Shown one piece after another: positions 11,176 to 60,651 of a DNA stretch of 64,000 nucleotides. The notes under the pieces are model-generated. The model worked only from the letters and a program-made list of their open reading frames with translations, was not told the origin of the DNA and searched no databases. Position numbers and translations under genes: made by a program. The DNA lies in IMG/VR virus record IMGVR_UViG_3300046542_000227, positions 124,001-188,000 of that record; one strand, given 5' to 3'. The first letter of the stretch is position 1. Each line of letters opens with the position of its first letter.

Positions 11176-11213
11176 GACATAAAGCCCCTCCCATCGCGGG
11201 AGGGGCCTATGCC
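11176..11213. repeat. Palindromic hairpin family RCATA-GC stem-loop-TATGY, likely bidirectional terminators; copies or variants at ~9444, 16399, 16703, 19603, 24582, 33280, 37745, 42015, 43038, 50102, 52912, 59541
   Basis: Recurrent intergenic inverted repeats with conserved outer arms, mostly at convergent gene junctions. Confidence 0.75.
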
Positions 11214-11219
11214 GCTTTT

Positions 11220-12098
11220 TTATTTGACCGAAGCATCGATCCAAGCAATGCAGCCGCGCATCCAGGCGTAGAACGCATCGTAACCGACGCAAGGACGGTT
11301 GTAATACGCATGACTGAAACGAGCCGAGTAGTCGAAGATGTCATTGATCAAGCGGAAACAGTTCCGGTTGTTCTCAACATCACGGCCGTAGGTGGCATTA
11401 GCTACCAGCTTCGCACCGTCTTCACTGTAGAGGTACCAGCGCTTGTTCAGTGTGGTGGCGAACTCACGGTCCCAAGCATCATGATAGCCAGTGTGGCTAT
11501 AGAAGCTGTCGACCATGTAGATCAGACTGGCTACCAGTTTAGTAACCTGCTCTTTGTTCAGGGCAGGTAGGCTAGCACCCTTCTTGCTGACGTCGTATTC
11601 CGTACCCAGCACGTTGAACTTCGGCGGCACGAACTTGAGGTCCATGGTTTCGAGGTGCGCAGCGAGCTTGTCGGGTTTGGTGTAGCCATACGACTTAACA
11701 AACTCGAAGGAGGGCTCTACCTTCTTCCAGTACGGGTCAGCAATCTTCTTGTTGGCAGCGTTCGACTTAACCCAGGCATCGGCCAGCTTACGCATACCGC
11801 CATTGTAGTCGCCAGTGAACGGTTCGCCGTATTGGCTAATCTTGACTTCACCTTCCACGAAGCGGCGCTTAGCGAGCCATTCTGGATCGAGGTAAGTCTT
11901 GCTCAGGGTGGCTTTGTTCAGTTGTGGGTCACCCTTGTCGTCAGACAACTTAGGTGCACGACCATGGCGGATGTTACGGAAGACGTCACCGATTGATTGG
12001 AAGAAACCTTCTTCCGATACAGTCAGATAGTTTTCGATGGAGACGCGTTCGTCGCCAACGGCACCCACGTTTTCATTTAGGAACTTTTCGAGATCCAT
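11220..12098 (-). CDS. Putative internal head protein, paralogue 1
   Basis: Acidic N-terminus with SIE and SEE|GF prohead-protease-type sites, KTYL..EWL..R motif, C-terminal DASVK. Confidence 0.6.
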   Translation of the reverse strand: MDLEKFLNENVGAVGDERVSIENYLTVSEEGFFQSIGDVFRNIRHGRAPKLSDDKGDPQLNKATLSKTYLDPEWLAKRRFVEGEVKISQYGEPFTGDYNGGMRKLADAWVKSNAANKKIADPYWKKVEPSFEFVKSYGYTKPDKLAAHLETMDLKFVPPKFNVLGTEYDVSKKGASLPALNKEQVTKLVASLIYMVDSFYSHTGYHDAWDREFATTLNKRWYLYSEDGAKLVANATYGRDVENNRNCFRLINDIFDYSARFSHAYYNRPCVGYDAFYAWMRGCIAWIDASVK

Positions 12099-13127
12099 TT
12101 ATTTCACCGATGCATCAATGAGTCGAGCGTAAGCCCGGATGATCGAATCAACATGGCGCAAATGGAATGCGATCATGCGATTCGGAATGCTGTAGACGTT
12201 CTTCATGAGGTCAAACATGCGCTCATGGACGTCAGTGTCGATTGGGTTCTGGCTGGCAGCGTCCGGGCCAGTGTTGTACTCTTCGGCGCGTTCCATGTAA
12301 TCTTCGAGTTCACCGATGTACGACTTGACGACTTGGAAGCCCTTCATGTTGGCGAAGTCCACGCGAAGCTCGGCCATGATATCCAAAGCCTTGGAGACTT
12401 CGATGATACCTTGTGCCGAAGTCATGACTTCGGTTGCAGACAACGCGGCACGTTTGTAGTCTTTGAGCTTAGCTGCGTTGAATGGCTTGTCGCTGTCCAG
12501 CGCTGGCGTCAGGATACGCTGAACGTGGGTGTTACCGAACGTGGTCCGGAAGTCTACAGTCAGGCGCACTTGGGATTGCTCCAGTGCCTCACTGATTGCT
12601 TCGAACTCGAAGTAGTTCAGGTTATCGGCACCCTGAGTGTTGGTCTTGCGCATGATGCGCTGCAGTTCCAGGTCGATCAAACGCAGGTACTGAGAATACA
12701 CCTCGGCAATCTTGCGTTGTTTTTCGAGGAAGTCTGCAATCGGTGCGGCCAGGTCGGTGGTGTTGATTACACCGTCGATACCGATATAGTCGTAAGAACC
12801 ATCGAGCTTGAGGATGGTGCCTTCACGCACACTGCGCCGGGCCAACCAGTCAGCATTTAGATAGGTCTTCTCCAATGCCTTGACGATAACGTCACGACGA
12901 GCAGACCAGCCACCGGCCATGGCACTAACACCTGGCTTACCTGGCTCAGACAACCAAGTCCAGAAACGTTTGAGTACTTCGGTGAAACCCTCTTGGGAAA
13001 TGGTCTCGTCACCATCCACACCAAAGAGCGCATCGACCTGCGATTCGACCGGAACTACCGTGTCGGTATCGGCCGTTGCGTTGTTATCAAGAAAGCTTTG
13101 AATATCCACATTAGTCCCCTTGGACAT
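12099..13127 (-). CDS. Putative internal head protein, paralogue 2
   Basis: SQE|GF site, KTYL..DWL..R motif, C-terminal DASVK; likely start MSKGTNV at 13127. Confidence 0.6.
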   Translation of the reverse strand: MSKGTNVDIQSFLDNNATADTDTVVPVESQVDALFGVDGDETISQEGFTEVLKRFWTWLSEPGKPGVSAMAGGWSARRDVIVKALEKTYLNADWLARRSVREGTILKLDGSYDYIGIDGVINTTDLAAPIADFLEKQRKIAEVYSQYLRLIDLELQRIMRKTNTQGADNLNYFEFEAISEALEQSQVRLTVDFRTTFGNTHVQRILTPALDSDKPFNAAKLKDYKRAALSATEVMTSAQGIIEVSKALDIMAELRVDFANMKGFQVVKSYIGELEDYMERAEEYNTGPDAASQNPIDTDVHERMFDLMKNVYSIPNRMIAFHLRHVDSIIRAYARLIDASVK

Positions 13128-13193
13128 GCCCCAAATGTTTACCACATACAATGCCAATTTGCCGTCAGCATTGCATGTGGTAAGCCCTGAGAG

Positions 13194-14930: not shown

Positions 14931-15023
14931 TGGTCGGTTCTATTGCTTATCACATATCGTTAGCAAGGAAATACCGGATGGTTTTATAGTCTGTTACTTC
15001 TAAACTGACATGGACTATTCGCC

Positions 15024-15296
15024 GTGACTGAGATCCTGCCCCGCCATCAATTTGAATTCCTAATGAAACACAACGACTTCGTTATTAATGAGGGTCGTAT
15101 TTCGTGTAACTTGTGTGGCAGTAATTGTGGGCAGTGTGGTGTCGGTCGTCAGCAATCGGACTGTCAGGATTACATTGATCACCATGCTGAGGAATTCGGA
15201 ATCAAACCCTTGCCCAAACTTAAAGACATGCCATTCCCGTCACCGATGGTGATCCTGATGGCTATCGCCTCTATCGTACACGTCTTCGTTCAATAA
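15024..15296 (+). CDS. Cys-rich protein with C-terminal TM segment
   Basis: CNLCGSNCGQC and terminal MVILMAIASIVHVFV. Confidence 0.55.
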   Translation: MTEILPRHQFEFLMKHNDFVINEGRISCNLCGSNCGQCGVGRQQSDCQDYIDHHAEEFGIKPLPKLKDMPFPSPMVILMAIASIVHVFVQ

Positions 15297-15305
15297 GGAC
15301 ATCCC

Positions 15306-16305: not shown

Positions 16306-16398
16306 ATGGCAGCGAAACGTAAACCTGCACCTAAGGTCAAACCTGAGGCTAAGCCGGACAATCGTATCAGTATCAAGATCCCGCTGTGCCTGCAATAA
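16306..16398 (+). CDS. Candidate 30-aa Lys/Pro-rich microprotein (not in ORF track)
   Basis: AGAGGA RBS; MAAKRKPAPKVKPEAKPDNRISIKIPLCLQ; followed directly by a hairpin. Confidence 0.45.
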   Translation: MAAKRKPAPKVKPEAKPDNRISIKIPLCLQ

Positions 16399-16515
16399 AC
16401 ATCTAGCCCGCTTCGGCGGGCTTTATGCCGTCTCGGACTTGAATGCACTATCCTTGAGAACTATATTGTCTTTGTGAATAAGGATCAATCGATCCTTAAC
16501 CATGGAGTAACAATA

Positions 16516-16692
16516 ATGAGCTTCTTTGACATCTTCAAACATGAACCTAAACGTGCTGCTCTGAACCATCGGTTGGCTTCGGCTAAACGTGGTCTGGAAC
16601 GTGCTATGCGTTTGCATGGTATCAACAGCGACCGGGCTCGTGAGTTTGACAAACTCATCGATAAACTGGAAGCCGAGAAACATTATGCATAA
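16516..16692 (+). CDS. Small basic hypothetical protein (58 aa)
   Basis: Early promoter at 16461 and GGAG RBS place the start at 16516. Confidence 0.6.
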   Translation: MSFFDIFKHEPKRAALNHRLASAKRGLERAMRLHGINSDRAREFDKLIDKLEAEKHYA

Positions 16693-16748
16693 GTGCATAG
16701 GCGGCATAGCGCTCTCCCTCACGGGAGAGCGACTATCCTTTTTTCTTT

Positions 16749-18638: not shown

Positions 18639-19568
18639 TTACTTGATGGAGCGATCAATCCAACGGCAAGACGCCAGCAACACGTCACCGTAATAACGAC
18701 GCACGACTGCAAACTCCTCAGAGCCCCAGTACATCGCAGCAGGGTCTAACCGGGTGGACACGTAGATCCAATCCTTTAACTTGCGCTGTGAGCCTTTGGG
18801 GAGCTGTGGGTTCTTGCTGTGACACAGTTGGATGAAGGGACGGGTCTGTACTGGACCTACCACGTCAAACGAAACCCGGGTAAAGGCATCACGCAGGGTA
18901 TTGAGCTCTTCGAGTTGTTCGAGGATACTCGCTACTAGCGTTTCGGTCTGGACGTAGTTCAGTGGACGGGCTTGCCATGCTACTTCAACTGGAGGCTTAA
19001 TCAGGTTAAAAGCTTTAGGGATTAGCCGATCCCCCACTGGAAACACCCGCGGTGGGTTCTTATAGAAGCTACCGACTTCAGGGATACCCTTGAGAAGCTT
19101 CAGGGCCTTGTCTAAGGCTTCATCGGTTAGCCCCGGGGTCAATGCTTCAACCACAGGCTTCACGGCTTTAAAGTAGGCTGTAACGGCTGCTAGCCATTCA
19201 CGGTGGACGGTGATGCAGAATGTCCCTGCATCCACCACCTGTTCACGGAGTTGCTCGGGGAAGATCTGATCCAAGTAAGGCAATAGATCACTACCTTCAA
19301 CTTTGGACTTAACCCAGTTCTGTTTACGCAGCCAGTCCTTGTTACCGTACTGACGACTGATCGCCGTCATGGTGGACTTAAAGTTGTACGTGTGTTCGAG
19401 TCTAACGGGTTTGTAGTCATCCCCTTTCAAACTCTTACCGAGTGAACCAAAGATAAACTCCTTGGCTTTATCGAAGAACCCTTCTTGTGAAATCACCAGG
19501 TTCTCCAGACTAACTCGGGTTTCGGTATCGAGTGCTGCCGATGAGGCTAGCCACTTATCAACGTCCAT
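18639..19568 (-). CDS. Putative internal head protein, paralogue 4
   Basis: SLE and SQE|GF sites, RQYG..DWL motif, C-terminal DRSIK; likely start MDVDKW at 19568. Confidence 0.6.
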   Translation of the reverse strand: MDVDKWLASSAALDTETRVSLENLVISQEGFFDKAKEFIFGSLGKSLKGDDYKPVRLEHTYNFKSTMTAISRQYGNKDWLRKQNWVKSKVEGSDLLPYLDQIFPEQLREQVVDAGTFCITVHREWLAAVTAYFKAVKPVVEALTPGLTDEALDKALKLLKGIPEVGSFYKNPPRVFPVGDRLIPKAFNLIKPPVEVAWQARPLNYVQTETLVASILEQLEELNTLRDAFTRVSFDVVGPVQTRPFIQLCHSKNPQLPKGSQRKLKDWIYVSTRLDPAAMYWGSEEFAVVRRYYGDVLLASCRWIDRSIK

Positions 19569-19634
19569 GAAAACCCCCTGTTTAAATACACAAGATAAAG
19601 GCGGCATAAAGCCCGCCGAAGCGGGCTCCATGGC

Positions 19635-20828
19635 TTAGCGTGGCAACCAGATACCTTGGGACTTCGGACGGTGCAGTGGGAAGTCGAAAGTACGACCGTG
19701 GTCATCGTGGCGAACCACGTTCACACGGTACTGACCATTGTCTTGTTCTTGTGGCGAGGCTTGGGTAGCAGCCACGTCCAACCAAGTGGTCATGTAAGGC
19801 AGCGGCATTGCCAGTGGGGCTTTAAAGTCCACTGGGCGCTCCAGTACATCCAGCGCATCAGCTACGTTGTAGTTGATGTAGGAACCAATCTCGTCCCAAC
19901 CTACACCCGGTACAATCGAACCGGAGTCACGTTGGAAATTCCGCCAGCGCATTTCAGAAGCACGTACTTCGAGTGCCATGTCATCGAGCAGTTGACGGTT
20001 GGCTTTCCAGCAAGCACGACCGCGTGGAGTGGACATCTCGTACTGGAGCACGTACTTACCGACGTTAACGTGGATCTCGGCTTCGTCTTGTGCGATGCGC
20101 TGTACCGCTTTGCAGATTGGCATGTAAGCACCAGTCTGAGCGATACCGCCAGTCACAGCAAACGAACCCATGAAGTTCACACGTTCCAGCAGGAACAGAG
20201 CCACGGTGAACATGAACGCAGCACGATAGGCTTCTTCGGAGTCACGAGCGATCAGACCCAGGGAGACCTTCAGACCCGTGCGATAGGATTCACCCATCAC
20301 CCGGCCGATGGTTTCCATACGCGACATGCCTTCTTTGATCTGCAGTACGCCCACCAGCACCGCGTTCGGTGCATCGAAGCTGTAACGGACGATCTCGGAA
20401 TAGGTAGTAGCGTGCAGGTTCTCGTTGGCTACGATTTGGTCCCACACTACTTTAAGTGCAGAATTGGTCACGAAGTGGTTACCCACTGCCATGATCGAGT
20501 TGGCGGCCATGGTGTCGCCTTCCCATTGCCAACCCAGGTTCTGGATCATAGCTTGGGCGATGGCCTGTTGCTCTTTACCTTCTTGCTTGAACTCCAGCAT
20601 ACAAGGGCTGAAGTCAAACTCATTGGTGTCCCAGTCGAGGCCACGCAGGCTACGCCAGAAGTCCCAGAGCTTTGGGTGTGGATCGTTTACGGTGTCGAGC
20701 AAACCAGCCTGCTCACCCAAGAACAAACGGCTGTCGCCATAGTTCTCTTTTTCGGCGTTGAAGATGTTACGGTCAAACATTGCAACTGATCCCGGTAGGA
20801 CCAGACCTGCTTCATTCAAATTGGACAT
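19635..20828 (-). CDS. nrdB: Ribonucleotide reductase class Ia beta subunit
   Basis: Di-iron ligands WEGD, ENLH, LERVNF, DEAEIH; radical Tyr in ENLHATTY. Confidence 0.92.
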   Translation of the reverse strand: MSNLNEAGLVLPGSVAMFDRNIFNAEKENYGDSRLFLGEQAGLLDTVNDPHPKLWDFWRSLRGLDWDTNEFDFSPCMLEFKQEGKEQQAIAQAMIQNLGWQWEGDTMAANSIMAVGNHFVTNSALKVVWDQIVANENLHATTYSEIVRYSFDAPNAVLVGVLQIKEGMSRMETIGRVMGESYRTGLKVSLGLIARDSEEAYRAAFMFTVALFLLERVNFMGSFAVTGGIAQTGAYMPICKAVQRIAQDEAEIHVNVGKYVLQYEMSTPRGRACWKANRQLLDDMALEVRASEMRWRNFQRDSGSIVPGVGWDEIGSYINYNVADALDVLERPVDFKAPLAMPLPYMTTWLDVAATQASPQEQDNGQYRVNVVRHDDHGRTFDFPLHRPKSQGIWLPR

Positions 20829-24099: not shown

Positions 24100-24580
24100 T
24101 TTTACAAGAGCAAATGCCACGATTGCATTCGACCGCGAAGCTTCGTTGGTGCTGGAAAAGAACCATTGGCGTAACATCGCACCTTTCCGCTTCTACATCG
24201 GCGAGAAGGACTCCAATGAATGGGTGGATGTACCTGCAGGCATTCTGTCTGACGGCGCTACTGTTCCATTCCCGGTTAACGCGTTGATCCCGGCTTGGGG
24301 TAGCTATGGTCAAGCGGTATTGATGCACGATTACCTGTGCAACACCTACACCAAGAAGATTTTGGTGGACAGTGTGGTCACGGTAGTGACGATTGACCGC
24401 GCAGAGATCGATAGCATCCTCAATGAGGCCATGGAAGTGCTCAAGGTTGAAACTTGGCGCCGTCTGGCTATCATGACAGGGGTTACCGGCTATCGCCTCC
24501 TGATGCGCCCTACAGCGCCTCGGCGTAATCCTGCTCGTGTACGGCTGGAAGCTGCCTTCGATCCGAATGCATACGCCTGA
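24092..24580 (+). CDS. DUF1353-like protein
   Basis: VPAG..SDGATVP and AVLMHDYL motifs; overlaps DHFR stop. Confidence 0.75.
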   Translation: MSSFTRANATIAFDREASLVLEKNHWRNIAPFRFYIGEKDSNEWVDVPAGILSDGATVPFPVNALIPAWGSYGQAVLMHDYLCNTYTKKILVDSVVTVVTIDRAEIDSILNEAMEVLKVETWRRLAIMTGVTGYRLLMRPTAPRRNPARVRLEAAFDPNAYA

Positions 24581-24622
24581 CGGCATAGTGCCCTCCCCAA
24601 TCGGGGAGGGCCTTTATGTCGC

Positions 24623-26803
24623 TTATGCCGCTCGGCGGAATCCACCGTACGGGGTTGGCTGTTGATAGCGGTTCACACGTGCTTGACGGGAACGTTCATC
24701 GGTAGCCTGTTTGATCATGGCGTCAATACCCACACCACCTGCATCATCACCGAAGTCGATCTCTTGAGACAGACGACGCAGCTGCATTTCGATACGGGAT
24801 ACGGCCATGTGATCCTTGGTGGTCTTAAGCAGATCCAGCAAGTTGTCGAATACTTCACGCATTTCAGCGTTACGCGCGATCTTACGACGTTCGATAGGGG
24901 AGACGTTCGACTCGTAAGCACGAGCTCGTGTCAGCACCGACCCTGGGGCGATACCATAGTGGAAGAGGTTCTGTCCTTTAATAGCCAGCCAGTGAGCCAG
25001 CAAGTAGGCAATAACCAAGTCGTCGTGTGCGCCTTTGGCGTGGTCAACCCGACCGTCTTTAACGATGAGGGTGAAGAACTCGTTGATGAGCTCTTTGTCT
25101 TTGATGACATGACCACCGTAACGGACAGCCGACATCATGATCTCGCCATACAGGCTATCACGAGAATGACGACCCGAACCTGCGGTGTTGAAACCGAAGT
25201 AGCGCTTGTACGGATTGTAGAAGCTGATCTGACGTTGCGACACTGGGGTCTGCAGACGGCGGAACTCTTCTTTGAAGTCATCCTTCTCATCGACGATGCG
25301 GTTGTAGATCCGTTTGAATGGATCGATACCCAAGGTGTTGAGGACAATGATCAGACTGTCCAAGATAGACAGGCCAGTCGACTTACGTTCGAACATGTAA
25401 GTGACGTTCACGTATTTCACCAGCATGTCTGCGATGAAGTGTGCGTACTGTTCGATGTTGGTTTCGTTGACTCGGCAAGTCATCAGGACTTCTGCAGTCT
25501 CGATGTCGTAGAGGATCATACCCATGGCGTCGTTGTCGCCACCCAGGCCTTCCGATGGGTCGAGGGCCAGGATAGTACGGCTGTTAGCCATACGTGCGTC
25601 TAGCTGCTCACGAGGGATCTGCCAGCGCAACGCGTAACGGTAGTCGTTGATCTCCATGTAGACCGGTTCAACTTCAGACTTGGCGATACGTGCGCGAGTC
25701 TCTTCATCAAACGGAGAACCAGTGGAGTCAGCGGTCCAGATGTTGAAGTAATCTCGGTCAGCCAGTTCCCCAGACGATGCCGAATCACGCAGCTTACCCA
25801 AGAGCCACTCATCAGACATACCCAGCTGTCGATGGTTGAACGCACCATAGACCAATGGCTTAAGTCCAGTGCTACCTTTATCGACGACTTCATGCAGAAT
25901 CGCTTCAGAAGGTAGGTCGAGGTAATGCTCAGACCAAGTAGCCCCACCGGTTAGGAAGGCATGTGCCCATTTACCGTCACGCGTCAGGATCGAACCTGGA
26001 GTCGTAGTGAAGATGTTACCGTAAGGCTGATTCGCTTCACGGGCTTGGTCACGGGCAGCACCAGCCGATGCCAGAGCTACAGGCAACGATACCCCGATCA
26101 AGTTGATGTAGGGTACTTCGTCGAACTGCATGATAGGTACGGTCATACCACGACCGAGTTTGTCGGCGGCGATCTTGTCGTTTCGACCTACTGCGGTCTT
26201 GTACTTGTTGTTCAAACGGATGCAGGTCAACAGGTCGGTGTTGTCGGCGTCGTTCGGGTTGGCTGGGTGAATGTAGTCCGGCATCAAGTCACGGATCTCT
26301 TTCATCCGCTCGACGTTGGAGTTCTTCAGTTTGGTATCTTTCGTGATCAGGTTGATCGTGGTGTTCGATGCCCAGATGTACATCAACGGTGCAGTCAAGC
26401 TATCCGTCGAACCAGATTTACCTGTCTGACGTGGTTGGATCAGTGCGAAGTCAACGTGGTTAAAGAAACACCAGTATAGGGCGAGGTTACCCCGGTTCGC
26501 TTTAAAGCGGATAGGTACGTCGCCGGAGTTGGCTGGGAGTCTTGCAACTTCACGGAAGTAGTACCATGGATTATAACGACATTCCATGGCAATCTTCATC
26601 TTGATCTCTGCCGACAGATCGTCAGCATGTGGATCAATCCCGGAGAGTTCAGGCTGCAGTAGCGCCAGCGGCCACTCGCAGTTATCGATCCCCATCTTCT
26701 TGTAAAGTTTTACGACACGTAGAAAGGATTGGTTACTGGTGTTATAGTCGACTACGGCCGTAGGAAACCTGGCCCAATCGCTCTTACGTAAAATGATATC
26801 CAA
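24623..26803 (-). CDS. terL: Terminase large subunit (phiKZ gp25-like)
   Basis: Walker A PRQTGKS, Walker B MQFDE, nuclease LALDPSEG and AHDD; size and synteny. Confidence 0.9.
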   Translation of the reverse strand: MDIILRKSDWARFPTAVVDYNTSNQSFLRVVKLYKKMGIDNCEWPLALLQPELSGIDPHADDLSAEIKMKIAMECRYNPWYYFREVARLPANSGDVPIRFKANRGNLALYWCFFNHVDFALIQPRQTGKSGSTDSLTAPLMYIWASNTTINLITKDTKLKNSNVERMKEIRDLMPDYIHPANPNDADNTDLLTCIRLNNKYKTAVGRNDKIAADKLGRGMTVPIMQFDEVPYINLIGVSLPVALASAGAARDQAREANQPYGNIFTTTPGSILTRDGKWAHAFLTGGATWSEHYLDLPSEAILHEVVDKGSTGLKPLVYGAFNHRQLGMSDEWLLGKLRDSASSGELADRDYFNIWTADSTGSPFDEETRARIAKSEVEPVYMEINDYRYALRWQIPREQLDARMANSRTILALDPSEGLGGDNDAMGMILYDIETAEVLMTCRVNETNIEQYAHFIADMLVKYVNVTYMFERKSTGLSILDSLIIVLNTLGIDPFKRIYNRIVDEKDDFKEEFRRLQTPVSQRQISFYNPYKRYFGFNTAGSGRHSRDSLYGEIMMSAVRYGGHVIKDKELINEFFTLIVKDGRVDHAKGAHDDLVIAYLLAHWLAIKGQNLFHYGIAPGSVLTRARAYESNVSPIERRKIARNAEMREVFDNLLDLLKTTKDHMAVSRIEMQLRRLSQEIDFGDDAGGVGIDAMIKQATDERSRQARVNRYQQPTPYGGFRRAA

Positions 26804-27197: not shown

Positions 27198-27253
27198 GTA
27201 ACACCCCTCCCTTTCGGGGGAGGGTTCCTATACCCCACGCAAGGAATAAATAA

Positions 27254-29369: not shown

Positions 29370-30044
29370 ATGTCAGTCGATATTACGAAGTACTTGATCG
29401 CTACTCCACTCCCGGTGTCATTGGAAAACCCAGTAGCCTTAGAACTGATGGGTGATGAAGCATTGCTCTACTGCCCAGAAGTAATCAGTCTGTTGGCTGA
29501 TGGTTCCGTACAGCTTACCGCTCCTACTAAAGGCGCATCCAGCAAGAGCACGCATCGTACACGTTGTGAATGGAAAGAACCTGAGTACTGGACTCTGGAC
29601 AGTGCGGCTAAACATTGGAGCCGTCAGGAAATGACGGTAACCAAAGTCAACGCTGCTGGGAAAGTAGTGATTGCGCAAGTCCATGTGAAGGACGCCACTA
29701 CACCACCGCTTAAAGTGTTCTGGAACAAAGGTAAGATTACCTGCGGTTTCCGTGCTAGCTTTGTTAGCCCAGAGATCGTTAACAGTACACTACATCCAGA
29801 TGTTCCTTTGGGTGCACGCTTTAAGATCAGCATCGGTGTTACTGCTGCTGGCTCGGTCTCGGTTAATGTGTTGTGCAACGGTGTGCCTTCAGCGAAGGTC
29901 ATGATGCGTCTGGGTAGTTCCTGGGATAACCAATGCCTCCAGTTCCATGGTGGTGTCTACAACCAGATCGATTATAGTGACGACACCTTAGCCGAAGATG
30001 GTTCGGTGTGCGTTATCCACGACCTCAGTACAACCCACGAGTAA
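29370..30044 (+). CDS. Polysaccharide lyase family 7 (alginate-lyase-like)
   Basis: RTRCEWKE, IAQVH and FHGGVYNQ correspond to the PL7 RxELR, QIH and YFKAGxYxQ motifs. Confidence 0.85.
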   Translation: MSVDITKYLIATPLPVSLENPVALELMGDEALLYCPEVISLLADGSVQLTAPTKGASSKSTHRTRCEWKEPEYWTLDSAAKHWSRQEMTVTKVNAAGKVVIAQVHVKDATTPPLKVFWNKGKITCGFRASFVSPEIVNSTLHPDVPLGARFKISIGVTAAGSVSVNVLCNGVPSAKVMMRLGSSWDNQCLQFHGGVYNQIDYSDDTLAEDGSVCVIHDLSTTHE

Positions 30045-30102
30045 AACATATACCCTCTACCTTAATGCGGTAGAGGGTTTTATTCCGTTTAGGAGTTTCG
30101 AC

Positions 30103-33274: not shown

Positions 33275-33328
33275 CAAGCGACATAAAACCCCTCCCGTAA
33301 CTGGGAGGGGCTTATGCCGTTTTTCTTT

Positions 33329-37731: not shown

Positions 37732-37797
37732 GCTATGCTATCAAGACATAAAGCCCTCCCCTTTCACGGGGGAGGGTATATGCCGCGTTGTGTGAAA

Positions 37798-41838: not shown

Positions 41839-42012
41839 ATGGCAGCCGTGTTGAATCAACCTACCTCCACAGCCGGGACTCCGGCACCCGCACAGGCAAC
41901 TGAGCGAAAGGCCCAGGGTCAACTGGTGTCCACCGGAGTCGCGGCTGCTCTCAACGGACTGGCTGGTGGTCTAGAGCAAGCTGCTAAAGAGCGTGCACTG
42001 GACAACCTGTAA
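41839..42012 (+). CDS. Candidate 57-aa Ala/Gly-rich microprotein (not in ORF track)
   Basis: AAGGAG RBS right after tube stop; hairpin follows its stop. Confidence 0.55.
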   Translation: MAAVLNQPTSTAGTPAPAQATERKAQGQLVSTGVAAALNGLAGGLEQAAKERALDNL

Positions 42013-42118
42013 AAACATACTGCCCTCCTCGATATGAGGAGGGCTTTATGCTGTCCACTGCATTTAGTCTGAGACCTATATCACTGAAGAGATAAACCAC
42101 CCAATCTAAGGAAGTGTT

Positions 42119-42385: not shown

Positions 42386-43035
42386 TGTCTAAAGTACACC
42401 AGTTGACACCAAAGCACGTTGAGGGTGTGGACTCGATGGGTAACCCCTTCGTGATCCACTTGTTGGGTTTTATGCCGTCCAATCTGGGTAGTCTGGCGGA
42501 ACTGCCTAACGTCTACCTGTACGAGCCCGAAAGCCAGTTCCACTTCTTCTTGCGGTTTGAGTTCGTTGGTGACATTAACACCACTCGGACTTTTATCAAC
42601 AACTATGAGTTGGACATCCTGACCAGCATGTATTGCGCTTTGATCAAAGCGCATATCCGTGATGCCGGGTTCAGTCTGCCTGAGCAAGTGGTGATCAGTG
42701 ACGTACACCAAATGCTACTCACCTTCCGGGATTCTGGCGTGTGTCATTCTTACGGGTGGTTGTACCGTGGGATGTCGCAAAGCTTTATCTTCGAGATGGG
42801 TGCAGTGTTCTTCCATGTCTATCGTGAAGAGAAGGCCGATCGTTGGTCTATCCCAATCGAGGTCAATGGCGTACGTCATCAGATCTACTTGATCACCAGT
42901 CCTACGAAAGTACGGCTGGATCCACAGACGGTGTTTGAAGGTAACGCCCAAGCGTACAGCGAACTCGAAGATTGGTTTAACAAGACCGTCAACGAATCGC
43001 CGTATACCCGGGCTGAGTTTGTAATGGTGCGGTAG
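42385..43035 (+). CDS. Hypothetical protein
   Basis: 216 aa, TAATG coupling. Confidence 0.6.
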   Translation: MSKVHQLTPKHVEGVDSMGNPFVIHLLGFMPSNLGSLAELPNVYLYEPESQFHFFLRFEFVGDINTTRTFINNYELDILTSMYCALIKAHIRDAGFSLPEQVVISDVHQMLLTFRDSGVCHSYGWLYRGMSQSFIFEMGAVFFHVYREEKADRWSIPIEVNGVRHQIYLITSPTKVRLDPQTVFEGNAQAYSELEDWFNKTVNESPYTRAEFVMVR

Positions 43036-43077
43036 ACGGCATAAGGGGAGGCTAGGCCTCCCCAGTGCTTTTTCTTT

Positions 43078-49603: not shown

Positions 49604-50107
49604 ATGGGGAAATCATTAACCAAGCAAATGGATGAGTTACTCGCCGATGACTTAGCGCTAGACCTCTTCCAGTTTACGGTGACCATTAAACACACATTGA
49701 AGCTTACTCGTGTGATCACGGGCTTCGTCTTTGCCTACAGTAAAGACAACCAGATCTACTACGACATGGTCCCATTGGTTTACGAACGCAATGGCATGCG
49801 AATCAAACTCCCCAAGTTTGCGATGCCCCCTGTGGTGAAGCAACGTATAGCCAAACATCAGTACCAGCGCTGGTATGTTTACAGTGACACGGTACTCTAT
49901 CCACTCCAAACGGCAAAACCCAATGTGCTCGAAGAATCCTTTATATTCACGGTAGACGATAACCCGTACTACCAAACACAAACCGCGTATCAAGAGGAAA
50001 CGATGTTCCTACGCAAGAAAGCATTGATGCATTGCCGACCCTTGAAGCCCGGATGGGGTGTTACATTGCGACGTAAACAAGTTGTAGAAAAGCTGGAACC
50101 AGCATAG
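49604..50107 (+). CDS. Hypothetical protein
   Basis: 167 aa, GAGGAG RBS. Confidence 0.6.
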   Translation: MGKSLTKQMDELLADDLALDLFQFTVTIKHTLKLTRVITGFVFAYSKDNQIYYDMVPLVYERNGMRIKLPKFAMPPVVKQRIAKHQYQRWYVYSDTVLYPLQTAKPNVLEESFIFTVDDNPYYQTQTAYQEETMFLRKKALMHCRPLKPGWGVTLRRKQVVEKLEPA

Positions 50108-50143
50108 ACCCCTCCCAGTGCCGGGAGGGGCTTATGTCGTTTT

Positions 50144-56043: not shown

Positions 56044-58215
56044 ATGGGTATTCGCAATGCATTCGTTCTCCCGGATTCGGAATATATCCGGGATCTGAAT
56101 ATCATCGACGGCACCATCGACGATAACGCCCGTTACGTTTCGTTGATGACACAAGACCCGTACGAAGAGTGCCGTGTGTTTGTACACGGTCTGCTCGCAC
56201 CAGAAGGTGAATTCAAACTGCGTAACCCCAAAGCGTTGATCCTGGACAAGGATCTGAACGGTGACCGTAAAGCGGTGACTGGAAACGTCATGGGTTTCAT
56301 CAAACGTGTGGAGCAACAAGGTCTCCTCCTGTCGCCGTCGATGACGGCTTATATGCCCTCAGCTCAACGCCAATCTACCCACGCTCTCTACATCGAAGAA
56401 GGTGTAAAGAACCGTTCGGTGGTAAAGCGGGAGATGATGGACTCGGAGCGTGCCGCTACTACGGAGAAAGATCCGCTCAAGAAGACGACACACAAAGAAC
56501 GTGCGCTGATGAAAAAGGGTGCACAAAACAACCTGAAGATCAACAATAACTCCTACTCAGGAGCCACGGTATCTGTTGCAACGATTCTGCATTACAAGTC
56601 GACTCACTCTTCATTGACCTCGACCTGCCGTAGTGCAACCTCTTACGCGAACGCTTCGAACGAGAAGTTCATCCGAGGCAACCGCCACTATTACACACCA
56701 GAAGTGGTTAAGGCCAACCTGGTAAGTTTGGTTAACCTTGCGCCATTGCAACAGGTTGAACAAGCTGTTGAGCAGTACGGTCTGTGCTACCCATCGCCAG
56801 ATCAGGTGATGGAGATGGTTTGGGAATCCAGTCGCCACTATTGGCAAGAGACTCCTGAGCTGGACAAGATCCGTCTGATGGTGACTAACATGACGCCAGT
56901 GCAACGCGCTGCGGTTATGTACGTCGGTGACATGTACCACCTGTACCTGCTTAACAAAGAACCAATCCGCAAGTTCCTGTTCCAGCTCTCGGCTGTGGGT
57001 AATCCAGCTACCGATATGCTGACTGACTCCGAGTACGACGATGTCGATGGTGACACGAAGCTGCTGGCTACCTTTATCTGCTATCAGGAAGTGGCTGGTC
57101 GCAAGATGAAGGAAATGAAAGAGCAGAACATGGATGACTATAACAAGGTCATCGCTACTGCCGGTAACGTACTGAAGACACTGGAAGAATACGAGCTGAT
57201 GCTCAAAGCGTTCTTCCTGACCAAGTGCTTGCCTTCATCTATTCATGCCTTCCCATCGATCCGTCGTAAAGCTGTACCGATCTCCGACACAGACTCCACG
57301 ATGTTTACATTGATGTGGTGGGTCAATGAACTGTTCGGTGAAGAAGAAGCCTTCTCGGCTGCTGCTCGCCGTCTGACGTTCGCCATGGTGTTCATGGTAT
57401 CGGAAGTGGTAATGCACATCCTCGCTGTGCTGTCGCGCAACATGGGTGTGGCTGATGACAAACTACGCTTGCTGGCGATGAAGAACGAGTACTACTTTGA
57501 AGTGCTCAGTCTCACCGCTCGCTCGAAGCACTACTATGCGTCTCAGGACGCTCTGGAAGGCCTCATGTTCAGCAAAGCGAAGATGGAGGTGAAAGGAGTA
57601 GGGCTCAGGGACTCTAAGGTTCCTCCGCGCATTCAGGCCCAAGCCAAGAAGATGATGGAGCGTATCATCAACACCATCAAGGCTGGCAAGAAGATCCAAC
57701 TCCACGACCTCCTCACCGAAGTCGCCAATATCGAACGCAGTATCAAACACTCGTTGGAGACTGGTCAGTTTGAATACTTGACCACAGCTCAGGTTAAACC
57801 GGCTGACTCCTACAAGTCGGATGAGAACGCAACCTTTAAACAGTACTCGCTGTGGCAGGATGTGTTTGCTCCGTCGTTTGGCAATACCCAGAAGCCGCCT
57901 TACCAAGCGGTGAAGCTCAGTCTGGTTACGCACAACAAAACCGAAGTCGATGCATGGTGTGAGAAGATGAACAACCCGGCGCTGGCGCTGCGGTTGAAGA
58001 CCTGGATGATGAAAGAAGGTAAGCGTGATATGAATACCTTGATCATCCCGGCAGCGGTAGTAGAGTCCTCCGGTATTCCCCGTGAGATTACCTGTGCTAT
58101 CGATACCCGTCGCGTTATCAGTAACGTAATGGGTGCGTTCTACATTATCCTTGAATCACTTGGCATCATGTTGGTAGAGAAGAATAACATCCGTTTGATC
58201 TCTGACTACTATTGA
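56044..58215 (+). CDS. Family-B DNA polymerase catalytic subunit (phiKZ gp50-like, split polymerase)
   Basis: Motif B QNNLKINNNSYSG and motif C ISDTDS; motif A and exonuclease motifs absent, as expected for the split enzyme. Confidence 0.85.
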   Translation: MGIRNAFVLPDSEYIRDLNIIDGTIDDNARYVSLMTQDPYEECRVFVHGLLAPEGEFKLRNPKALILDKDLNGDRKAVTGNVMGFIKRVEQQGLLLSPSMTAYMPSAQRQSTHALYIEEGVKNRSVVKREMMDSERAATTEKDPLKKTTHKERALMKKGAQNNLKINNNSYSGATVSVATILHYKSTHSSLTSTCRSATSYANASNEKFIRGNRHYYTPEVVKANLVSLVNLAPLQQVEQAVEQYGLCYPSPDQVMEMVWESSRHYWQETPELDKIRLMVTNMTPVQRAAVMYVGDMYHLYLLNKEPIRKFLFQLSAVGNPATDMLTDSEYDDVDGDTKLLATFICYQEVAGRKMKEMKEQNMDDYNKVIATAGNVLKTLEEYELMLKAFFLTKCLPSSIHAFPSIRRKAVPISDTDSTMFTLMWWVNELFGEEEAFSAAARRLTFAMVFMVSEVVMHILAVLSRNMGVADDKLRLLAMKNEYYFEVLSLTARSKHYYASQDALEGLMFSKAKMEVKGVGLRDSKVPPRIQAQAKKMMERIINTIKAGKKIQLHDLLTEVANIERSIKHSLETGQFEYLTTAQVKPADSYKSDENATFKQYSLWQDVFAPSFGNTQKPPYQAVKLSLVTHNKTEVDAWCEKMNNPALALRLKTWMMKEGKRDMNTLIIPAAVVESSGIPREITCAIDTRRVISNVMGAFYIILESLGIMLVEKNNIRLISDYY

Positions 58216-58272
58216 TACACCGCCCCGGGTAATACCGGGGCTTCTTTTATTCCGTCTATGGGGACAATAACA

Positions 58273-58644: not shown

Positions 58645-58677
58645 ATACCTTCTATCTACAGTAACAAGGATTAGCCA

Positions 58678-59538
58678 ATGCAATTCTCAATGAATGGTAA
58701 AGTTTCCGCATCCATTGCTGACATGCTCGATATTCCTGCAGGTCGGGTTACGTTTACCGATCGATCCAGTCCTTACCTGCGTGGTGGTTCCCTTAACCAT
58801 GGTTTGCGCCGCGATGAGCTGCCGGTACTGACTAGCCTTCGGGTTGGCCATGGTGGGCATGTTACGGGTTCTTGGGGTAGCACCAAGATTCAGAATGCCA
58901 GTTATTCCGGCATGCGGTTGCCCATGGGTAACTACATGGGTAAGTCTATGGCTAGCTGGTATTACAGAGAGCCTATGTTCAGAGGTATGGCTGATCTGGC
59001 TGTGGCGCTCCACCACTGTAAATACCTGTCGGTGAATGTCTCACAGTTACGCCTTACACCGCTGATCTTCGTGCATGAGTTGTTGTCGATACATAACAAC
59101 TTCGTCATGCACCACGCGCGCAACGTAGGCAAGTCATGGTCCATTCAACGGATGCTGGGGATGCTCCAGCGGGGTTTGGTAAGCGTGCCGATGTGGTCTA
59201 CTCTGTTCGAGCGGTCAGAGTTCAGTTCGGACTACCTGCCTGAGTCCTACCGCAAAGCTAGATCACGGTTTAGCTGGATGTCAGACATACACTTCGGGTC
59301 ATTCGACAGTAGCCTTTACCCTGAGTATGGTGGATATGTCTTGTGTGATTCGATCACCCAGTATGACTACATGTCGATATTCCCGGAGCGTGGACTGCCA
59401 GTAACGTCCGAGTGTCTGCGTCGCAAGATCTACGGCGCATCTATCCCTGCTAAGCGTAGTAAAAAGAAACCAGTAGAACCCCGCGTGTTGTTCCCATCGC
59501 AGACCCCTGCTCAGATCTCTGCTTGGGTAAACCGTTAA
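58678..59538 (+). CDS. Basic hypothetical protein
   Basis: 286 aa, AAGGA RBS, ends at a palindromic hairpin. Confidence 0.55.
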   Translation: MQFSMNGKVSASIADMLDIPAGRVTFTDRSSPYLRGGSLNHGLRRDELPVLTSLRVGHGGHVTGSWGSTKIQNASYSGMRLPMGNYMGKSMASWYYREPMFRGMADLAVALHHCKYLSVNVSQLRLTPLIFVHELLSIHNNFVMHHARNVGKSWSIQRMLGMLQRGLVSVPMWSTLFERSEFSSDYLPESYRKARSRFSWMSDIHFGSFDSSLYPEYGGYVLCDSITQYDYMSIFPERGLPVTSECLRRKIYGASIPAKRSKKKPVEPRVLFPSQTPAQISAWVNR

Positions 59539-59574
59539 ACGGCATAAAGCCCTCCCGTAATGGGAGGGCCTATG

Positions 59575-60651
59575 TCAACTCACCATCTTCAATACTTGCT
59601 CGACTTGTTGCTTGTAGATACGTGCCAGTTCAGGATCACCAATCGTACCGACGGTGTTATCCCACTTAGCCTCCAACAAAGCAATCTTGATTTTACCCAG
59701 CGCAGCGCCATCGGTCCGGTTAGATGTAAGCACCTGACTGACCAGATACTTCACGTAAGGTAATCGGGCGAGAATGATCGCCCATTCATTTTGCCGTGTC
59801 ACAGGATCCTTAGGAATCCCTGCGGTATGGAACAGGTTATCTCCAGACAGCACCGGGGTTGACCATGCCAGTTGTTCGATGTCTTCGCTACGATGAGCAG
59901 AGGCACCATTCACCACTGTACACACCCGGTCAATCCGTGGAGCCATGTCAGTAAGATAGAAAGGATGCGCAATCGGGAAGTTGGGAGTACCAATTCCCTG
60001 AGCTGCCCGCGCCAGTCTATTAAAGAAGGCAATGTCCAGATAGCTATCAATCGCATTCGGTAACACGAACCCACCGATAAAACGATAGACGGTATCTTTA
60101 GGACCACCCTGAGGAACATGATGACGCAACCAATGGCGATACATCACCGCCAACATCGGAACGTTCAACGACGCTACCCCGTAACCTTTACCCGGGGTTT
60201 TGTTGTTCATGATCGGCAGGTTGAGATCTGTCCGCGAATGGTAGAGGTAACGGAACGGTTGCAGTTCACGCCACGTCTGTTTGAGGTTGCTGGTATCGAA
60301 GCTTTCAGTGTTGGCAATAATGACCTCACTGGTAGCCTCACCCAACGTCACCCCACCGACGTGTGCTTTACCCTTACTAATAGAAGAGGTCATGCCGAAC
60401 GCTTTGATCAAGGGATCACAAACGTCCTCGACCATGGCTGCGAATGCACGGTCGTCCAAATCCATGCGCATGTGAATATGCAGAAGGATGTTGCCAAGGA
60501 TGTTCTTGCCGTCGACCTGTTTGGGGTTACGACGGTAGTAGGACTTGACATCCTCCAGCATTCCCACGTAGCTACGCCGAACGTAGATCAGATCGGGGAA
60601 TACATAGGGACTCGTCTTTCGGGACGGTACCCCTTTGAAGAGATCGTACAT
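59575..60651 (-). CDS. Conserved phiKZ-family protein (gp52-like by position)
   Basis: 358 aa, divergent from the chimallin locus. Confidence 0.65.
   Translation of the reverse strand: MYDLFKGVPSRKTSPYVFPDLIYVRRSYVGMLEDVKSYYRRNPKQVDGKNILGNILLHIHMRMDLDDRAFAAMVEDVCDPLIKAFGMTSSISKGKAHVGGVTLGEATSEVIIANTESFDTSNLKQTWRELQPFRYLYHSRTDLNLPIMNNKTPGKGYGVASLNVPMLAVMYRHWLRHHVPQGGPKDTVYRFIGGFVLPNAIDSYLDIAFFNRLARAAQGIGTPNFPIAHPFYLTDMAPRIDRVCTVVNGASAHRSEDIEQLAWSTPVLSGDNLFHTAGIPKDPVTRQNEWAIILARLPYVKYLVSQVLTSNRTDGAALGKIKIALLEAKWDNTVGTIGDPELARIYKQQVEQVLKMVS

What the first reader, a model, noticed from the sequence alone, without database searches (positions are those of the whole stretch)
11176..59576. Genome-wide palindromic element family: RCATA - GC hairpin - TATGY
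About 13 intergenic hairpins have variable GC stems but conserved, mutually complementary outer arms (e.g. GACATAAAGCCC...GGGCCTATGCC). Seven sit at convergent junctions between plus-strand early and minus-strand late genes. The conserved arms go beyond a plain terminator and put TATG, the phiKZ late-promoter core, on both strands. Hypotheses: phage-RNAP-specific terminators, terminator-promoter cassettes, RNA processing or export signals, or DNA-binding sites.
Basis: partly seen in the sequence, partly recalled or inferred. Interest (0 to 1): 0.6.

Follow-up and report, generated by a model that had tools for sequence, protein, structure and literature searches.

The report
Conserved two-way terminators of phiKZ-like phage
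The palindromic RCATA-hairpin-TATGY elements are real, but they are this jumbo phage's copies of the conserved hairpin-plus-TTATG transcription terminator already mapped in phages phiKZ and 201phi2-1, mostly built to work on both strands.

Summary
The window has 8 GC hairpins with TATGY tails on both strands, against 0 in 100 shuffles, and 8 with one tail, against 1.1. The whole 267-kb genome has about 61 such sites. The consensus is CGRCATAA-(G)CCCYCCC-loop-GGGRGGG(C)-YTTATGYCGT. That matches the terminator motif BCCYCCCCHWWDGGGRRGGBYTTATKYYGT mapped by ONT-cappable-seq in phiKZ, which also recurs in 201phi2-1.

A covariance model built only from this genome finds mapped phiKZ terminators and four 201phi2-1 terminators validated in a reporter assay. 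It also has many hits in Noxifer, PhiPA3, Psa21 and Xanthomonas RTH11, and none in EL, OBP, SPN3US, RP12, RSF1 or T4.

The context points to terminators, not promoters. Elements sit at 19 of 19 convergent gene junctions but at 1 of 18 divergent ones. In phiKZ, 0 of 27 tails coincide with a mapped transcript start, and mapped 3' ends fall within 3 nt of the tail's G.

The outer "arms" are the terminator tails of the two strands. One feature I found no report of: the base after TATG is C on one strand and T on the other in 145 of 179 two-tailed elements across seven phages. The arms are therefore systematically non-complementary at that position.

This is a new member of a known kind.

The parts
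11174..11216 (.). Two-tailed element, ACGACATAAAG-CCCCTCCC-loop-GGGAGGGG-CCTATGCCGCT. Lies at the convergent junction between ORF 10653-11174(+) and virion structural paralog 11220-12098(-).
   Evidence: R1 scores 45.8 and 44.6 bits on the two strands. RNA folds at -24.7 and -32.7 kcal/mol, z -4.4 and -6.1.
24580..24630 (.). Two-tailed element plus a second tail word in tandem (CTTTATGTCGCTTATGCCG). Convergent junction before the terminase large subunit gene 24623-26803(-).
   Evidence: R1 scores 40.7 and 39.7 bits. Folds.
33278..33320 (.). Two-tailed element at the convergent junction between 32804-33274(+) and virion structural gene 33329-34972(-).
   Evidence: R1 scores 42.7 and 44.7 bits. 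Folds.
37743..37786 (.). Two-tailed element between two minus-strand genes, 34976-37663 and 37798-38760.
   Evidence: R1 scores 38.8 and 39.9 bits. A two-tailed element sits at the syntenic Noxifer junction.
42012..42054 (.). Two-tailed element between plus-strand genes (after 40959-41825). Stem is CCCTCCTC / GAGGAGGG.
   Evidence: R1 scores 34.6 and 33.5 bits. Unchanged in soil and wetland strain variants where covered.
50099..50140 (.). Two-tailed element at the convergent junction between 49604-50107(+) and 50144-50509(-).
   Evidence: R1 scores 41.6 and 39.4 bits. Syntenic Noxifer copy.
59539..59579 (.). Two-tailed element at the convergent junction between 58678-59538(+) and 59575-60651(-).
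   Evidence: R1 scores 32.9 and 36.4 bits. Folds.
16700..16741 (-). Mixed element at the convergent junction 16474-16692(+) / 16749-17771(-). The minus-strand tail is TATGCCG; the plus-strand tail is an ordinary T-rich tract.
43033..43075 (-). Mixed element at the convergent junction 42385-43035(+) / 43078-44313(-). The hairpin has the G-arm first (GGGGAGGC/GCCTCCCC). The minus-strand tail is TTATGCCGT; the plus-strand tail is T-rich.
   Evidence: Unchanged in strain variants where covered.
16395..16432 (+). Single-tailed element, AGCCCGC-ttcg-GCGGGCT-TTATGCCGTC, between plus-strand genes.
   Evidence: R1 E-value 0.0014.
19600..19637 (-). Single-tailed element with a minus-strand tail TTTATGCCGCC, between minus-strand genes 18639-19631 and 19635-20828.
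   Evidence: R1 E-value 0.0014.
9441..9478 (+). Single-tailed element, CCCGCCC-tccg-GGGCGGG-TCTATGCCCG.
1472..1517 (+). Single-tailed element, TAGAGGAGCC-ttcg-GGCTCCTCTA-TGTCCG. The syntenic Noxifer junction carries a two-tailed copy.
3178..3209 (-). Hairpin CGGCGGG/CCCGCCG with a minus-strand tail CTCTATGTCC.
5239..5281 (.). Atypical copy (GGGAGTC/GACTCCC) with distant CATA / TATG words. It overlaps the end of ORF 4947-5264.
240..285 (+). Variant tail: ACCCCTCCC-loop-GGGAGGGGT-TTATTCCGTC, with T at the K position of the phiKZ motif.
30042..30092 (+). Variant: ACATAT-ACCCTCTACC-loop-GGTAGAGGGT-TTTATTCCGT.
58222..58256 (+). Variant: GCCCCGG-loop-CCGGGGC-TTCTTTTATTCCGT.

Best explanation
The elements are intrinsic (hairpin-dependent) transcription terminators of a nucleus-forming, phiKZ-like jumbo phage. 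They belong to the conserved terminator family already mapped in phiKZ and 201phi2-1.

Each functional half is a GC-rich CCCYCCC/GGGRGGG hairpin followed by a short, U-poor tail, YUUAUG-YCG-U. By analogy with phiKZ, the RNA ends at or within about 3 nt of the G of that tail, which is 5-8 nt after the stem. The 'conserved outer arms' are simply this tail written on each strand. Where both tails are present, the element stops transcription from both directions. That explains why every convergent gene junction has one. It also explains why many tandem junctions carry one, where the second tail would stop antisense or read-in transcription.

Shown here: the sequence identity of the motif, its genomic context, syntenic conservation, and cross-detection of mapped terminators. 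Inferred: that RNA 3' ends form at these sites in this uncultivated phage, and which polymerase is stopped.
For: 1. Motif identity. The consensus here is nCGGCATAAnnCCCnCCCCnnnGGGGnGGGnTTTATGCCGn, with a tail profile G-arm/YY/TATG/Y/C/G/T. The published phiKZ motif, from 61 mapped terminators, is BCCYCCCCHWWDGGGRRGGBYTTATKYYGT. 201phi2-1 motif A (n=59) resembles it, and motif B lengthens the hairpin.

2. Cross-detection. Model R1 was built only from this genome. It hits phiKZ at the mapped terminators T011, T012/13, T015, T018/19, T036, T039, T057, T059/60, T067, T070/71 and T076. It hits 201phi2-1 at four of the eight terminators validated in a reporter: 84,756; 179,552; 183,876; 289,834.

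3. Context in the 267-kb genome. Of 143 GC hairpins inside genes, only 4 carry a TATGY tail. Elements lie at 19 of 19 convergent junctions, 1 of 18 divergent junctions and 47 of 236 tandem junctions. Stop codons abut the arm.

4. phiKZ data. Twenty-six mapped 3' ends lie -3 to +2 nt from the G/T of TATK. Of 48 tails, 19 have a 3' end within 4 nt. Of 27 tails, 0 have a transcript start within 3 nt.

5. Vertical conservation. Twenty-two junctions whose element is two-tailed in Noxifer are syntenic with an element in this genome (almost all of those also two-tailed), with compensatory stem changes and conserved tails.

6. Stable RNA folds on both strands, z -4.1 to -6.9.

7. The genome is phiKZ-like. 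It encodes chimallin, tail sheath and terminase and split multisubunit RNA polymerase pieces.
Against: No RNA data exist for this phage; all 24 listed holder runs are DNA metagenomes. Termination at these sites is therefore inferred from relatives.

Mapped 3' ends in phiKZ could in principle be processed ends rather than release sites.

In tandem junctions, antisense tails are about as frequent as sense tails. In phiKZ these antisense tails mostly lack a mapped 3' end, so their use is unproven.

The C/T rule at the base after TATG is not explained by a plain hairpin-plus-U-tract mechanism.

Stem pairs are so conserved that covariation on the model alignment does not exceed shuffles.
Confidence: 0.85

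Rival explanations
1. A refinement rather than an alternative. The tail is a signal read by the phage's own polymerase. During elongation, the non-template TATG enters the same beta-lobe pocket that recognises the TATG late-promoter core. This pauses the enzyme with its active site at the G, just after the hairpin, and so replaces the long U-tract of ordinary terminators.
For: The phiKZ non-virion polymerase binds non-template TATG in a gp123 pocket, and the transcript starts at the G. Mapped phiKZ 3' ends cluster -3 to +2 around that same G. Conservation extends beyond the weak U-tract to TATG-Y-C-G. That tail is kept across phages from 37% to 58% GC. The motif is absent from the more distant relatives EL, OBP, SPN3US and RP12.
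Against: A TTATT variant of the tail is common here and in phiKZ (K in the published motif). 201phi2-1 copies terminate in uninfected Pseudomonas, that is, with host polymerase. Early genes are transcribed by the virion polymerase, whose promoter is different. No pause or termination biochemistry exists for these enzymes in the papers I found.
Confidence: 0.25
2. Terminator-promoter cassette. The TATG after the hairpin is a working late promoter that restarts transcription on one or both strands.
For: TATG is the phiKZ late-promoter core. Detached TTATGCCG words occur after some U-tracts. Six of 27 phiKZ tails have a separate mapped start 4-60 nt further downstream.
Against: None of 27 phiKZ tails coincides with a mapped start within 3 nt. 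Elements occupy 19 of 19 convergent junctions but only 1 of 18 divergent ones; at a convergent junction a promoter could only make antisense RNA. Candidate TATG promoters in divergent gaps are followed by R or TG, not YCG. The TTATT tail variant lacks TATG.
Confidence: 0.05
3. RNA processing, stability or export signal. The hairpin and tail mark sites of endonucleolytic cutting, 3'-end protection, or recognition for export from the phage nucleus. RNA ends would then arise after transcription rather than by release.
For: Long outer helices form on one strand of each element, -29 to -33 kcal/mol. A conserved wobble or mismatch in the outer helix is the kind of feature that RNA-binding proteins read. 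ONT 3' ends cannot by themselves tell release from processing.
Against: 201phi2-1 copies lower downstream reporter expression in a two-colour terminator trap without phage proteins. The geometry, with ends 5-8 nt after a GC stem, is that of intrinsic termination. Transcripts terminated at the G lack the YCG needed for the outer helix.
Confidence: 0.08
4. Mobile or selfish palindromic repeats (REP- or MITE-like), or protein-binding sites on DNA, that only happen to lie between genes.
For: There are many near-identical copies, for example the identical copies at window 11184 and genome position 207026. The elements are palindromic.
Against: Copies sit at the same junctions in Noxifer, with compensatory stem changes. 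They lie strictly at gene 3' ends and are nearly absent from divergent gaps. No presence/absence variation appeared in strain variants where covered. The identical copies follow paralogous genes.
Confidence: 0.03

Closest known systems
phiKZ conserved intrinsic terminator motif (Putzeys et al. 2024, microLife; PMC10914365)
   Same: Same CCYCCCC/GGGRRGG hairpin, same YTTATKYYGT tail and same intergenic 3'-end position, with bidirectional pairs at convergent genes. The upstream RCATA arm is visible in that paper's Table S4 sequences. Model R1 from this genome finds those sites.
   Different: This phage belongs to a different lineage (Noxifer-like, 52% GC against 37%). The tail more often ends in CCG/TCG. 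No RNA ends have been mapped here. In the text I read, the paper describes the motif on one strand only and does not discuss the palindromic arms or the C/T rule.
201phi2-1 terminator motifs A and B (PMC11512511)
   Same: Motif A resembles the phiKZ motif, and adding motif B elongates the hairpin. Fifteen sites were called bidirectional. Eight terminators were validated in a reporter, and R1 hits four of those eight.
   Different: The logos themselves are not available to me, so equating motif B with the upstream arm is my inference.
Bidirectional intrinsic terminators of bacteria (hairpin flanked by an A-tract and a U-tract; from my own knowledge, not tested here)
   Same: One hairpin serves both strands. 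The upstream flank is the complement of the downstream tail. They are favoured at convergent genes.
   Different: Here the flanks are not simple A/U runs. They are a specific word, TTATGYCG, conserved across phage genera, with a fixed non-complementary position.
phiKZ non-virion polymerase late promoter, TATG with the start at G (PMC12809450)
   Same: It shares the four-base word TATG, and the polymerase active site sits at the same register (start at G; RNA 3' end around G).
   Different: Tails are preceded by a hairpin and followed by YCG. They lie at gene ends, and none coincides with a mapped start in phiKZ.
REP/BIME extragenic palindromes of Pseudomonas and enterobacteria (from my own knowledge)
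   Same: Short GC-rich intergenic palindromes present in many copies.
   Different: There is no sign of mobility, copies are syntenic between phages, and they are confined to 3' ends.

Membership tests
phiKZ-type conserved intrinsic terminator | GC-rich stem-loop of the form CCYCCCC-loop-GGGRRGG | tested here: met
   The consensus of 53 strand copies is CCCnCCCC...GGGGnGGG.
phiKZ-type conserved intrinsic terminator | Tail YTTATKYYGT directly after the stem | tested here: met
   Tail profile of 91 tails. The word TTAT[GT]YCG occurs 71 times in the genome, about 52 of them right after a strong hairpin. The K=T variant is present.
phiKZ-type conserved intrinsic terminator | Lies downstream of genes, with paired opposite sites between convergent genes | tested here: met
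   Elements at 19 of 19 convergent junctions and 1 of 18 divergent junctions; only 4 of 143 intragenic GC hairpins have a tail.
phiKZ-type conserved intrinsic terminator | Detected by one sequence-structure model together with experimentally mapped members | tested here: met
   R1 finds mapped phiKZ terminators and reporter-validated 201phi2-1 terminators. It finds none in T4, EL, OBP, SPN3US, RP12 or RSF1.
phiKZ-type conserved intrinsic terminator | RNA 3' ends map at the tail | not testable with these tools
   No RNA run holds this phage. In phiKZ the ends lie -3 to +2 nt from the tail's G/T.
phiKZ-type conserved intrinsic terminator | The host phage is phiKZ-like and carries its own multisubunit RNA polymerases | tested here: met
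   Chimallin, tail sheath and terminase. Polymerase beta and beta' domain hits over the Pfam cut-offs. The nearest relatives are Noxifer and DT01.
phiKZ late promoter (TATG) | A primary transcript starts at the G of TATG | tested here: not met
   Tested on published phiKZ data: 0 of 27 hairpin tails lie within 3 nt of a mapped start. Not testable in this phage itself.
phiKZ late promoter (TATG) | Lies upstream of late genes, in divergent or 5' intergenic regions | tested here: not met
   Only 1 of 18 divergent junctions has an element. The window's 7 divergent gaps have plain TATG words without hairpins.
REP/MITE-like mobile palindromes | Insertion polymorphism and non-syntenic copies between relatives | tested here: not met
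   Twenty-two junctions whose element is two-tailed in Noxifer are syntenic with an element in this genome. No gain or loss appeared in strain variants where covered, but coverage was patchy.

The most novel reading that the evidence does not exclude
The tail is more than a weak U-tract. [quoted passage not shown] The family-wide rule that a two-tailed element carries one TATGC and one TATGT tail then reflects selection on a specific wobble or mismatch (G.U on one transcript, A.C on the other) in the outer helix. Possible reasons are to keep a pyrimidine after TATG on both strands while preventing a perfect 18-bp palindrome, or to serve as a recognition feature.
Probability: 0.2. Interest if true: 0.65.

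Novelty: new member of a known kind. Interest (0 to 1): 0.3.

Why it matters
As a finding about this window it is mostly annotation. It gives about 60 reliable transcription-unit boundaries in an uncultivated Noxifer-like jumbo phage. It also shows that the phiKZ terminator word is conserved across at least seven lineages (phiKZ, 201phi2-1, PhiPA3, Psa21, Noxifer, DT01 in weaker form, and Xanthomonas RTH11) despite a GC range of 37-58%. That breadth argues that the tail is read by something conserved in these phages, most simply their unusual multisubunit polymerases. Termination by those enzymes has not been studied biochemically in the papers I found.

Two points could be followed up cheaply with phiKZ enzymes that already exist. 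First, the RNA ends at the same TATG register where late transcripts start. Second, the C/T rule.

Tried and rejected
1. RNA evidence for this phage. The look-up of sequencing runs listed only DNA metagenomes, including a rhizosphere source and soil, wetland and compost holders, so no 3'-end mapping was possible.

2. Read laying of four DNA holders on window 37700-43100, 5,401 letters as the operators' note requires. Contigs were short and patchy. The elements at 42012-42054 and 43033-43075 were unchanged where covered, and no insertion or deletion of elements appeared. This is too thin to say more.

3. The plain word pattern CATA-N(14-34)-TATGY is not significant by itself. The hairpin requirement is what makes the signal.

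4. The sigma-70 promoter and terminator scan picked up only some elements, because their tails are not T-rich.

5. Covariation on the model alignment A3 does not exceed shuffles, because the stems are nearly invariant. Structural support comes from syntenic compensatory changes instead.

6. blastn synteny to DT01 found no usable flanks. R1 finds only 4 weak hits there, although a hairpin-plus-TATGY scan finds 17 two-tailed sites.

7. I looked for a link between the C or T tail and strand, sense versus antisense, or spacer type, and found none.

8. I tested whether intergenic TATG words away from hairpins prefer a purine next. Overall they do not (T 22, A 14, G 13, C 12), so the promoter-versus-tail distinction remains anecdotal.

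9. Supplementary tables were not held for the two journal versions, so I used the bioRxiv supplement. I read only TTS T001-T076 and TSS P008-P066.

Full report
**What the window is**

The window is bases 124,001-188,000 of a single 267,320-bp virus contig with direct terminal repeats and 52% GC. Its ribonucleotide reductase gene is 77-78% identical in DNA to Pseudomonas phages Noxifer and pPa_SNUABM_DT01. It is more distantly similar to PhiPA3, Psa21 and Ralstonia and Xanthomonas jumbo phages. The window encodes these genes:
- NAD-dependent ligase, 5343-7493 (+)
- two paralogous virion proteins, 11220-12098 (-) and 16749-17771 (-)
- terminase large subunit, 24623-26803 (-)
- a virion structural protein, 33329-34972 (-)
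- tail sheath, 38858-40924 (+)
- DNA polymerase, 56044-58215 (+)
- the nuclear-shell protein chimallin, 61095-62969 (+)

The genome also has split multisubunit RNA polymerase beta and beta' domains. It is therefore a nucleus-forming phiKZ-like phage. The only runs that hold it are DNA metagenomes, from rhizosphere, soil, wetland and similar samples.

Yes. A direct scan finds the quoted elements at the quoted places. With a hairpin finder (at least 6 perfect pairs, GC-rich core, loop of 3-8), the window holds 60 GC hairpins against 33.9 +/- 5.9 in 100 dinucleotide-preserving shuffles. Eight have TATGY within 16 nt on both strands, against none in any shuffle. Eight more have it on one strand, against 1.1 +/- 1.0. 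The bare word pattern without the hairpin requirement is not significant.

Genome-wide there are 250 GC hairpins. Thirty are two-tailed and 31 single-tailed, giving 91 strand-specific tails. The word TTAT[GT]YCG occurs 71 times, and about 52 of these directly follow a strong hairpin.

- The stems are mostly one sequence, (G)CCC(C)TCCC / GGGAGGG(G)C.
- The conserved flanks are longer than described: CGRCATAA upstream and YTTATGYCGT downstream.
- The flanks are not perfectly complementary (see "The arms are not simply a longer stem" below).

**Where the elements sit**

I used a rough self-trained gene call of 274 genes covering 88% of the genome. Of 143 GC hairpins inside genes, only 4 have a TATGY tail, which is about the chance level. 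Elements with TATG-type tails occupy the junction types as follows:

| Junction type | Junctions with an element |
|---|---|
| Convergent | 19 of 19 |
| Divergent | 1 of 18 |
| Tandem, plus strand | 38 of 186 |
| Tandem, minus strand | 9 of 50 |

In the window, all 7 convergent junctions have an element and none of the 7 divergent gaps does. Stop codons usually abut the upstream arm, as TGA/TAA/TAG followed by CGRCATAA. This is the distribution expected of terminators and the opposite of that expected of promoters.

**What is known about such elements**

Putzeys et al. (microLife 2024, PMC10914365) mapped transcript ends in phiKZ by ONT-cappable-seq. They reported that 61 terminators share the motif BCCYCCCCHWWDGGGRRGGBYTTATKYYGT, a stem-loop followed by TTAT. 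A later study of 201phi2-1 (PMC11512511) found 132 termination sites, 15 of them bidirectional. It described a motif A (n=59) that "strongly resembles" the phiKZ motif and a motif B that elongates the hairpin. It validated eight terminators in a two-colour reporter in uninfected Pseudomonas chlororaphis, where sites with elongated stems were strongest. The window's consensus is the same motif.

The sequences in the phiKZ supplementary Table S4 also carry the upstream RCATA arm. One example is T011, GCATATCGCCTCCC..GGGAGGCTTTATGT. The opposite-strand pairs T012/13, T018/19, T051/52, T059/60 and T070/71 show it as well.

**Testing membership**

I aligned 53 strand copies from this genome and built covariance model R1 from them. 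Strand matches in other genomes were:

| Genome | R1 strand matches | E-value cut-off |
|---|---|---|
| This genome | 60 | 0.01 |
| Noxifer | 54 | 0.01 |
| phiKZ | 36 | 0.01 |
| DT01 | 4 (weak) | 0.01 |
| 201phi2-1 | 40 | 0.01 |
| EL, OBP, SPN3US, T4 | 0 | 0.01 |
| PhiPA3 | 49 | 0.001 |
| Psa21 | 18 | 0.001 |
| Xanthomonas RTH11 | 22 | 0.001 |
| RP12, RSF1 | 0 | 0.001 |

The phiKZ hits include the mapped terminators listed above. The 201phi2-1 hits include four of the eight reporter-validated sites (84,756; 179,552; 183,876; 289,834).

Using the phiKZ genome and the published coordinates that I read (T001-T076 and P008-P066):
- 26 mapped 3' ends with a hairpin-plus-TTATK tail lie -3 to +2 nt from the G/T of TATK.
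- 19 of 48 hairpin-TATGY tails in the first 168 kb have a mapped 3' end within 4 nt on the same strand. The ones without are mostly antisense tails in tandem gene runs.
- None of 27 tails in the region covered by the start-site list has a mapped start within 3 nt. Six have a separate start 4-60 nt further on.

**Conservation between relatives**

Twenty-two junctions whose element is two-tailed in Noxifer are syntenic with an element in this genome, and almost all of those are also two-tailed here (1472-1517, for example, is single-tailed here). Loops differ, stems show compensatory changes, and the CATA/TATG words are kept. Examples are CCTACCC/GGGTAGG against CCTGCCC/GGGCAGG, and CCCCTGCC/GGCAGGGG against CCCCTCCC/GGGAGGGG. 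This argues for vertical inheritance under selection and against a mobile repeat. Strain variants in soil and wetland metagenomes show no change in the two elements they cover, but coverage is thin.

**How it most likely works**

Each half is an intrinsic terminator. RNA folds into the GC hairpin; both strands of four window elements fold at -21 to -33 kcal/mol, with z-scores of -4.1 to -6.9. By analogy with phiKZ, the transcript ends 5-8 nt later, at UAUG(Y). The "arms" are the tails of the two strands. An element with both tails stops transcription from both sides, which a genome with 19 convergent junctions and tight gene packing needs.

Mixed elements also exist, with a TATGCCG tail on one strand and an ordinary T-rich tail on the other (window 16700-16741 and 43033-43075). 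There are also variants with TTATTCCG, the K of the published motif. Because 201phi2-1 copies work in uninfected cells, the elements also function with host polymerase.

In tandem junctions, antisense tails are about as common as sense tails. Whether they stop antisense transcription or only lengthen the hairpin, as 201phi2-1 motif B is said to do, is not settled.

**The arms are not simply a longer stem**

In two-tailed elements the perfect inverted repeat never exceeds 11 bp. Spacers between the stem and TATG often differ on the two sides. The base after TATG is C on one strand and T on the other in most two-tailed elements:

| Genome | C/T combination among two-tailed elements |
|---|---|
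| This genome | 28 of 30 |
| PhiPA3 | 34 of 36 |
| phiKZ | 17 of 20 |
| 201phi2-1 | 15 of 17 |
| Noxifer | 25 of 33 |
| DT01 | 11 of 17 |
| RTH11 | 15 of 26 |
| Pooled | 145 of 179 |

At most half would be expected, so the pooled excess gives P of about 8e-18.

On a model-based alignment of 104 strand copies from four genomes, that position is G.U in 45, a non-pair (A.C type) in 49 and Watson-Crick in only 10. The neighbouring pairs are Watson-Crick in 100 and 69 of 104. Single-tailed elements prefer TATGC, 25 against 6 in this genome. Each element therefore gives one transcript with a continuous outer helix containing a G.U, and one with an A.C interruption.

I found no link to strand, sense or spacer. 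The simplest reading has two parts. A pyrimidine is wanted after TATG on each strand, and full complementarity of the outer arms is selected against. A conserved wobble read by a protein is the alternative. I did not find this rule described in the papers I read.

**The TATG coincidence**

The phiKZ non-virion polymerase recognises TATG on the non-template strand in a pocket of gp123 and starts at the G (PMC12809450). The terminator tails place the same word so that RNA ends around that same G. This invites the hypothesis that the elongating phage enzyme pauses on the tail by re-binding TATG, which would compensate for the weak U-tract. The hypothesis would explain why the tail word is conserved from 37% to 58% GC. 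Against it stand the TTATT variant, function with host polymerase, and the use of a different polymerase for early genes. It is untested, and I give it about one chance in four or five.

**Verdict**

The elements are new members, in an uncultivated Noxifer-like phage, of a terminator family already mapped in phiKZ and 201phi2-1. The additions from this work are the breadth of the family across genera, the explicit two-tail reading of the palindrome, the strong contrast between convergent and divergent junctions, and the C/T rule.

Noticed in passing
window 11174-59579 and genome-wide; also phiKZ, PhiPA3, 201phi2-1, Noxifer, DT01, RTH11: In two-tailed elements the base after TATG is C on one strand and T on the other (145 of 179 across seven phages). 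The outer arms therefore carry a fixed G.U / A.C position instead of a Watson-Crick pair. Unexplained.
   Followed up: partly
window 4706-4713, 24612-24630, 26840-26847 (minus strand): Tail words (TTATGCCG / TTATTCCG) stand detached from a hairpin, either after a T-run or as a second copy in tandem (CTTTATGTCGCTTATGCCG). They could be back-up stop sites or something else.
   Followed up: no
window 33314-35008(+) vs 33329-34972(-); 38804-40837(-) vs 38858-40924(+); 61023-63035(-) vs 61095-62969(+); several others: Many real genes are shadowed by a stop-free antisense ORF of almost the same length. This is unusual for a 52% GC genome. It is probably a codon-usage effect (few TTA/CTA/TCA codons), but I did not test that.
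   Followed up: no
window 60652-60730: An AT-rich word upstream of the chimallin operon (AAAAATAATTAACCACTATATCATCG) resembles the phiKZ early-promoter consensus (...TATATTAC).
   Followed up: no
window 14931-15305, 23374-23562, 26804-27287, 38761-38857, 51311-51451 (divergent gaps): Plain TATG words without hairpins lie upstream of the structural, terminase and tail sheath genes. They are followed by G, A or TG rather than YCG, and are candidate late promoters distinct from the terminator tails.
   Followed up: partly
window 11220-12098(-) and 16749-17771(-); genome position 207026: Paralogous virion protein genes (phrog_28891) are each followed by an element. The copy at window 11184 is identical, flanks included, to one at genome 207026, which suggests a gene-plus-terminator duplication.
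   Followed up: no
DT01 (MW735835), whole record: The close relative DT01 gives only 4 weak hits with model R1, yet it has 17 two-tailed hairpin-TATGY sites. Its stems have diverged from the CCCTCCC type.
   Followed up: partly
window 40620-40660: Metagenome contigs from other organisms lie partly on a short GC-rich stretch of the tail sheath gene, with many loose ends and a 3+2+1-base deletion variant. It is probably a conserved or low-complexity patch.
   Followed up: no
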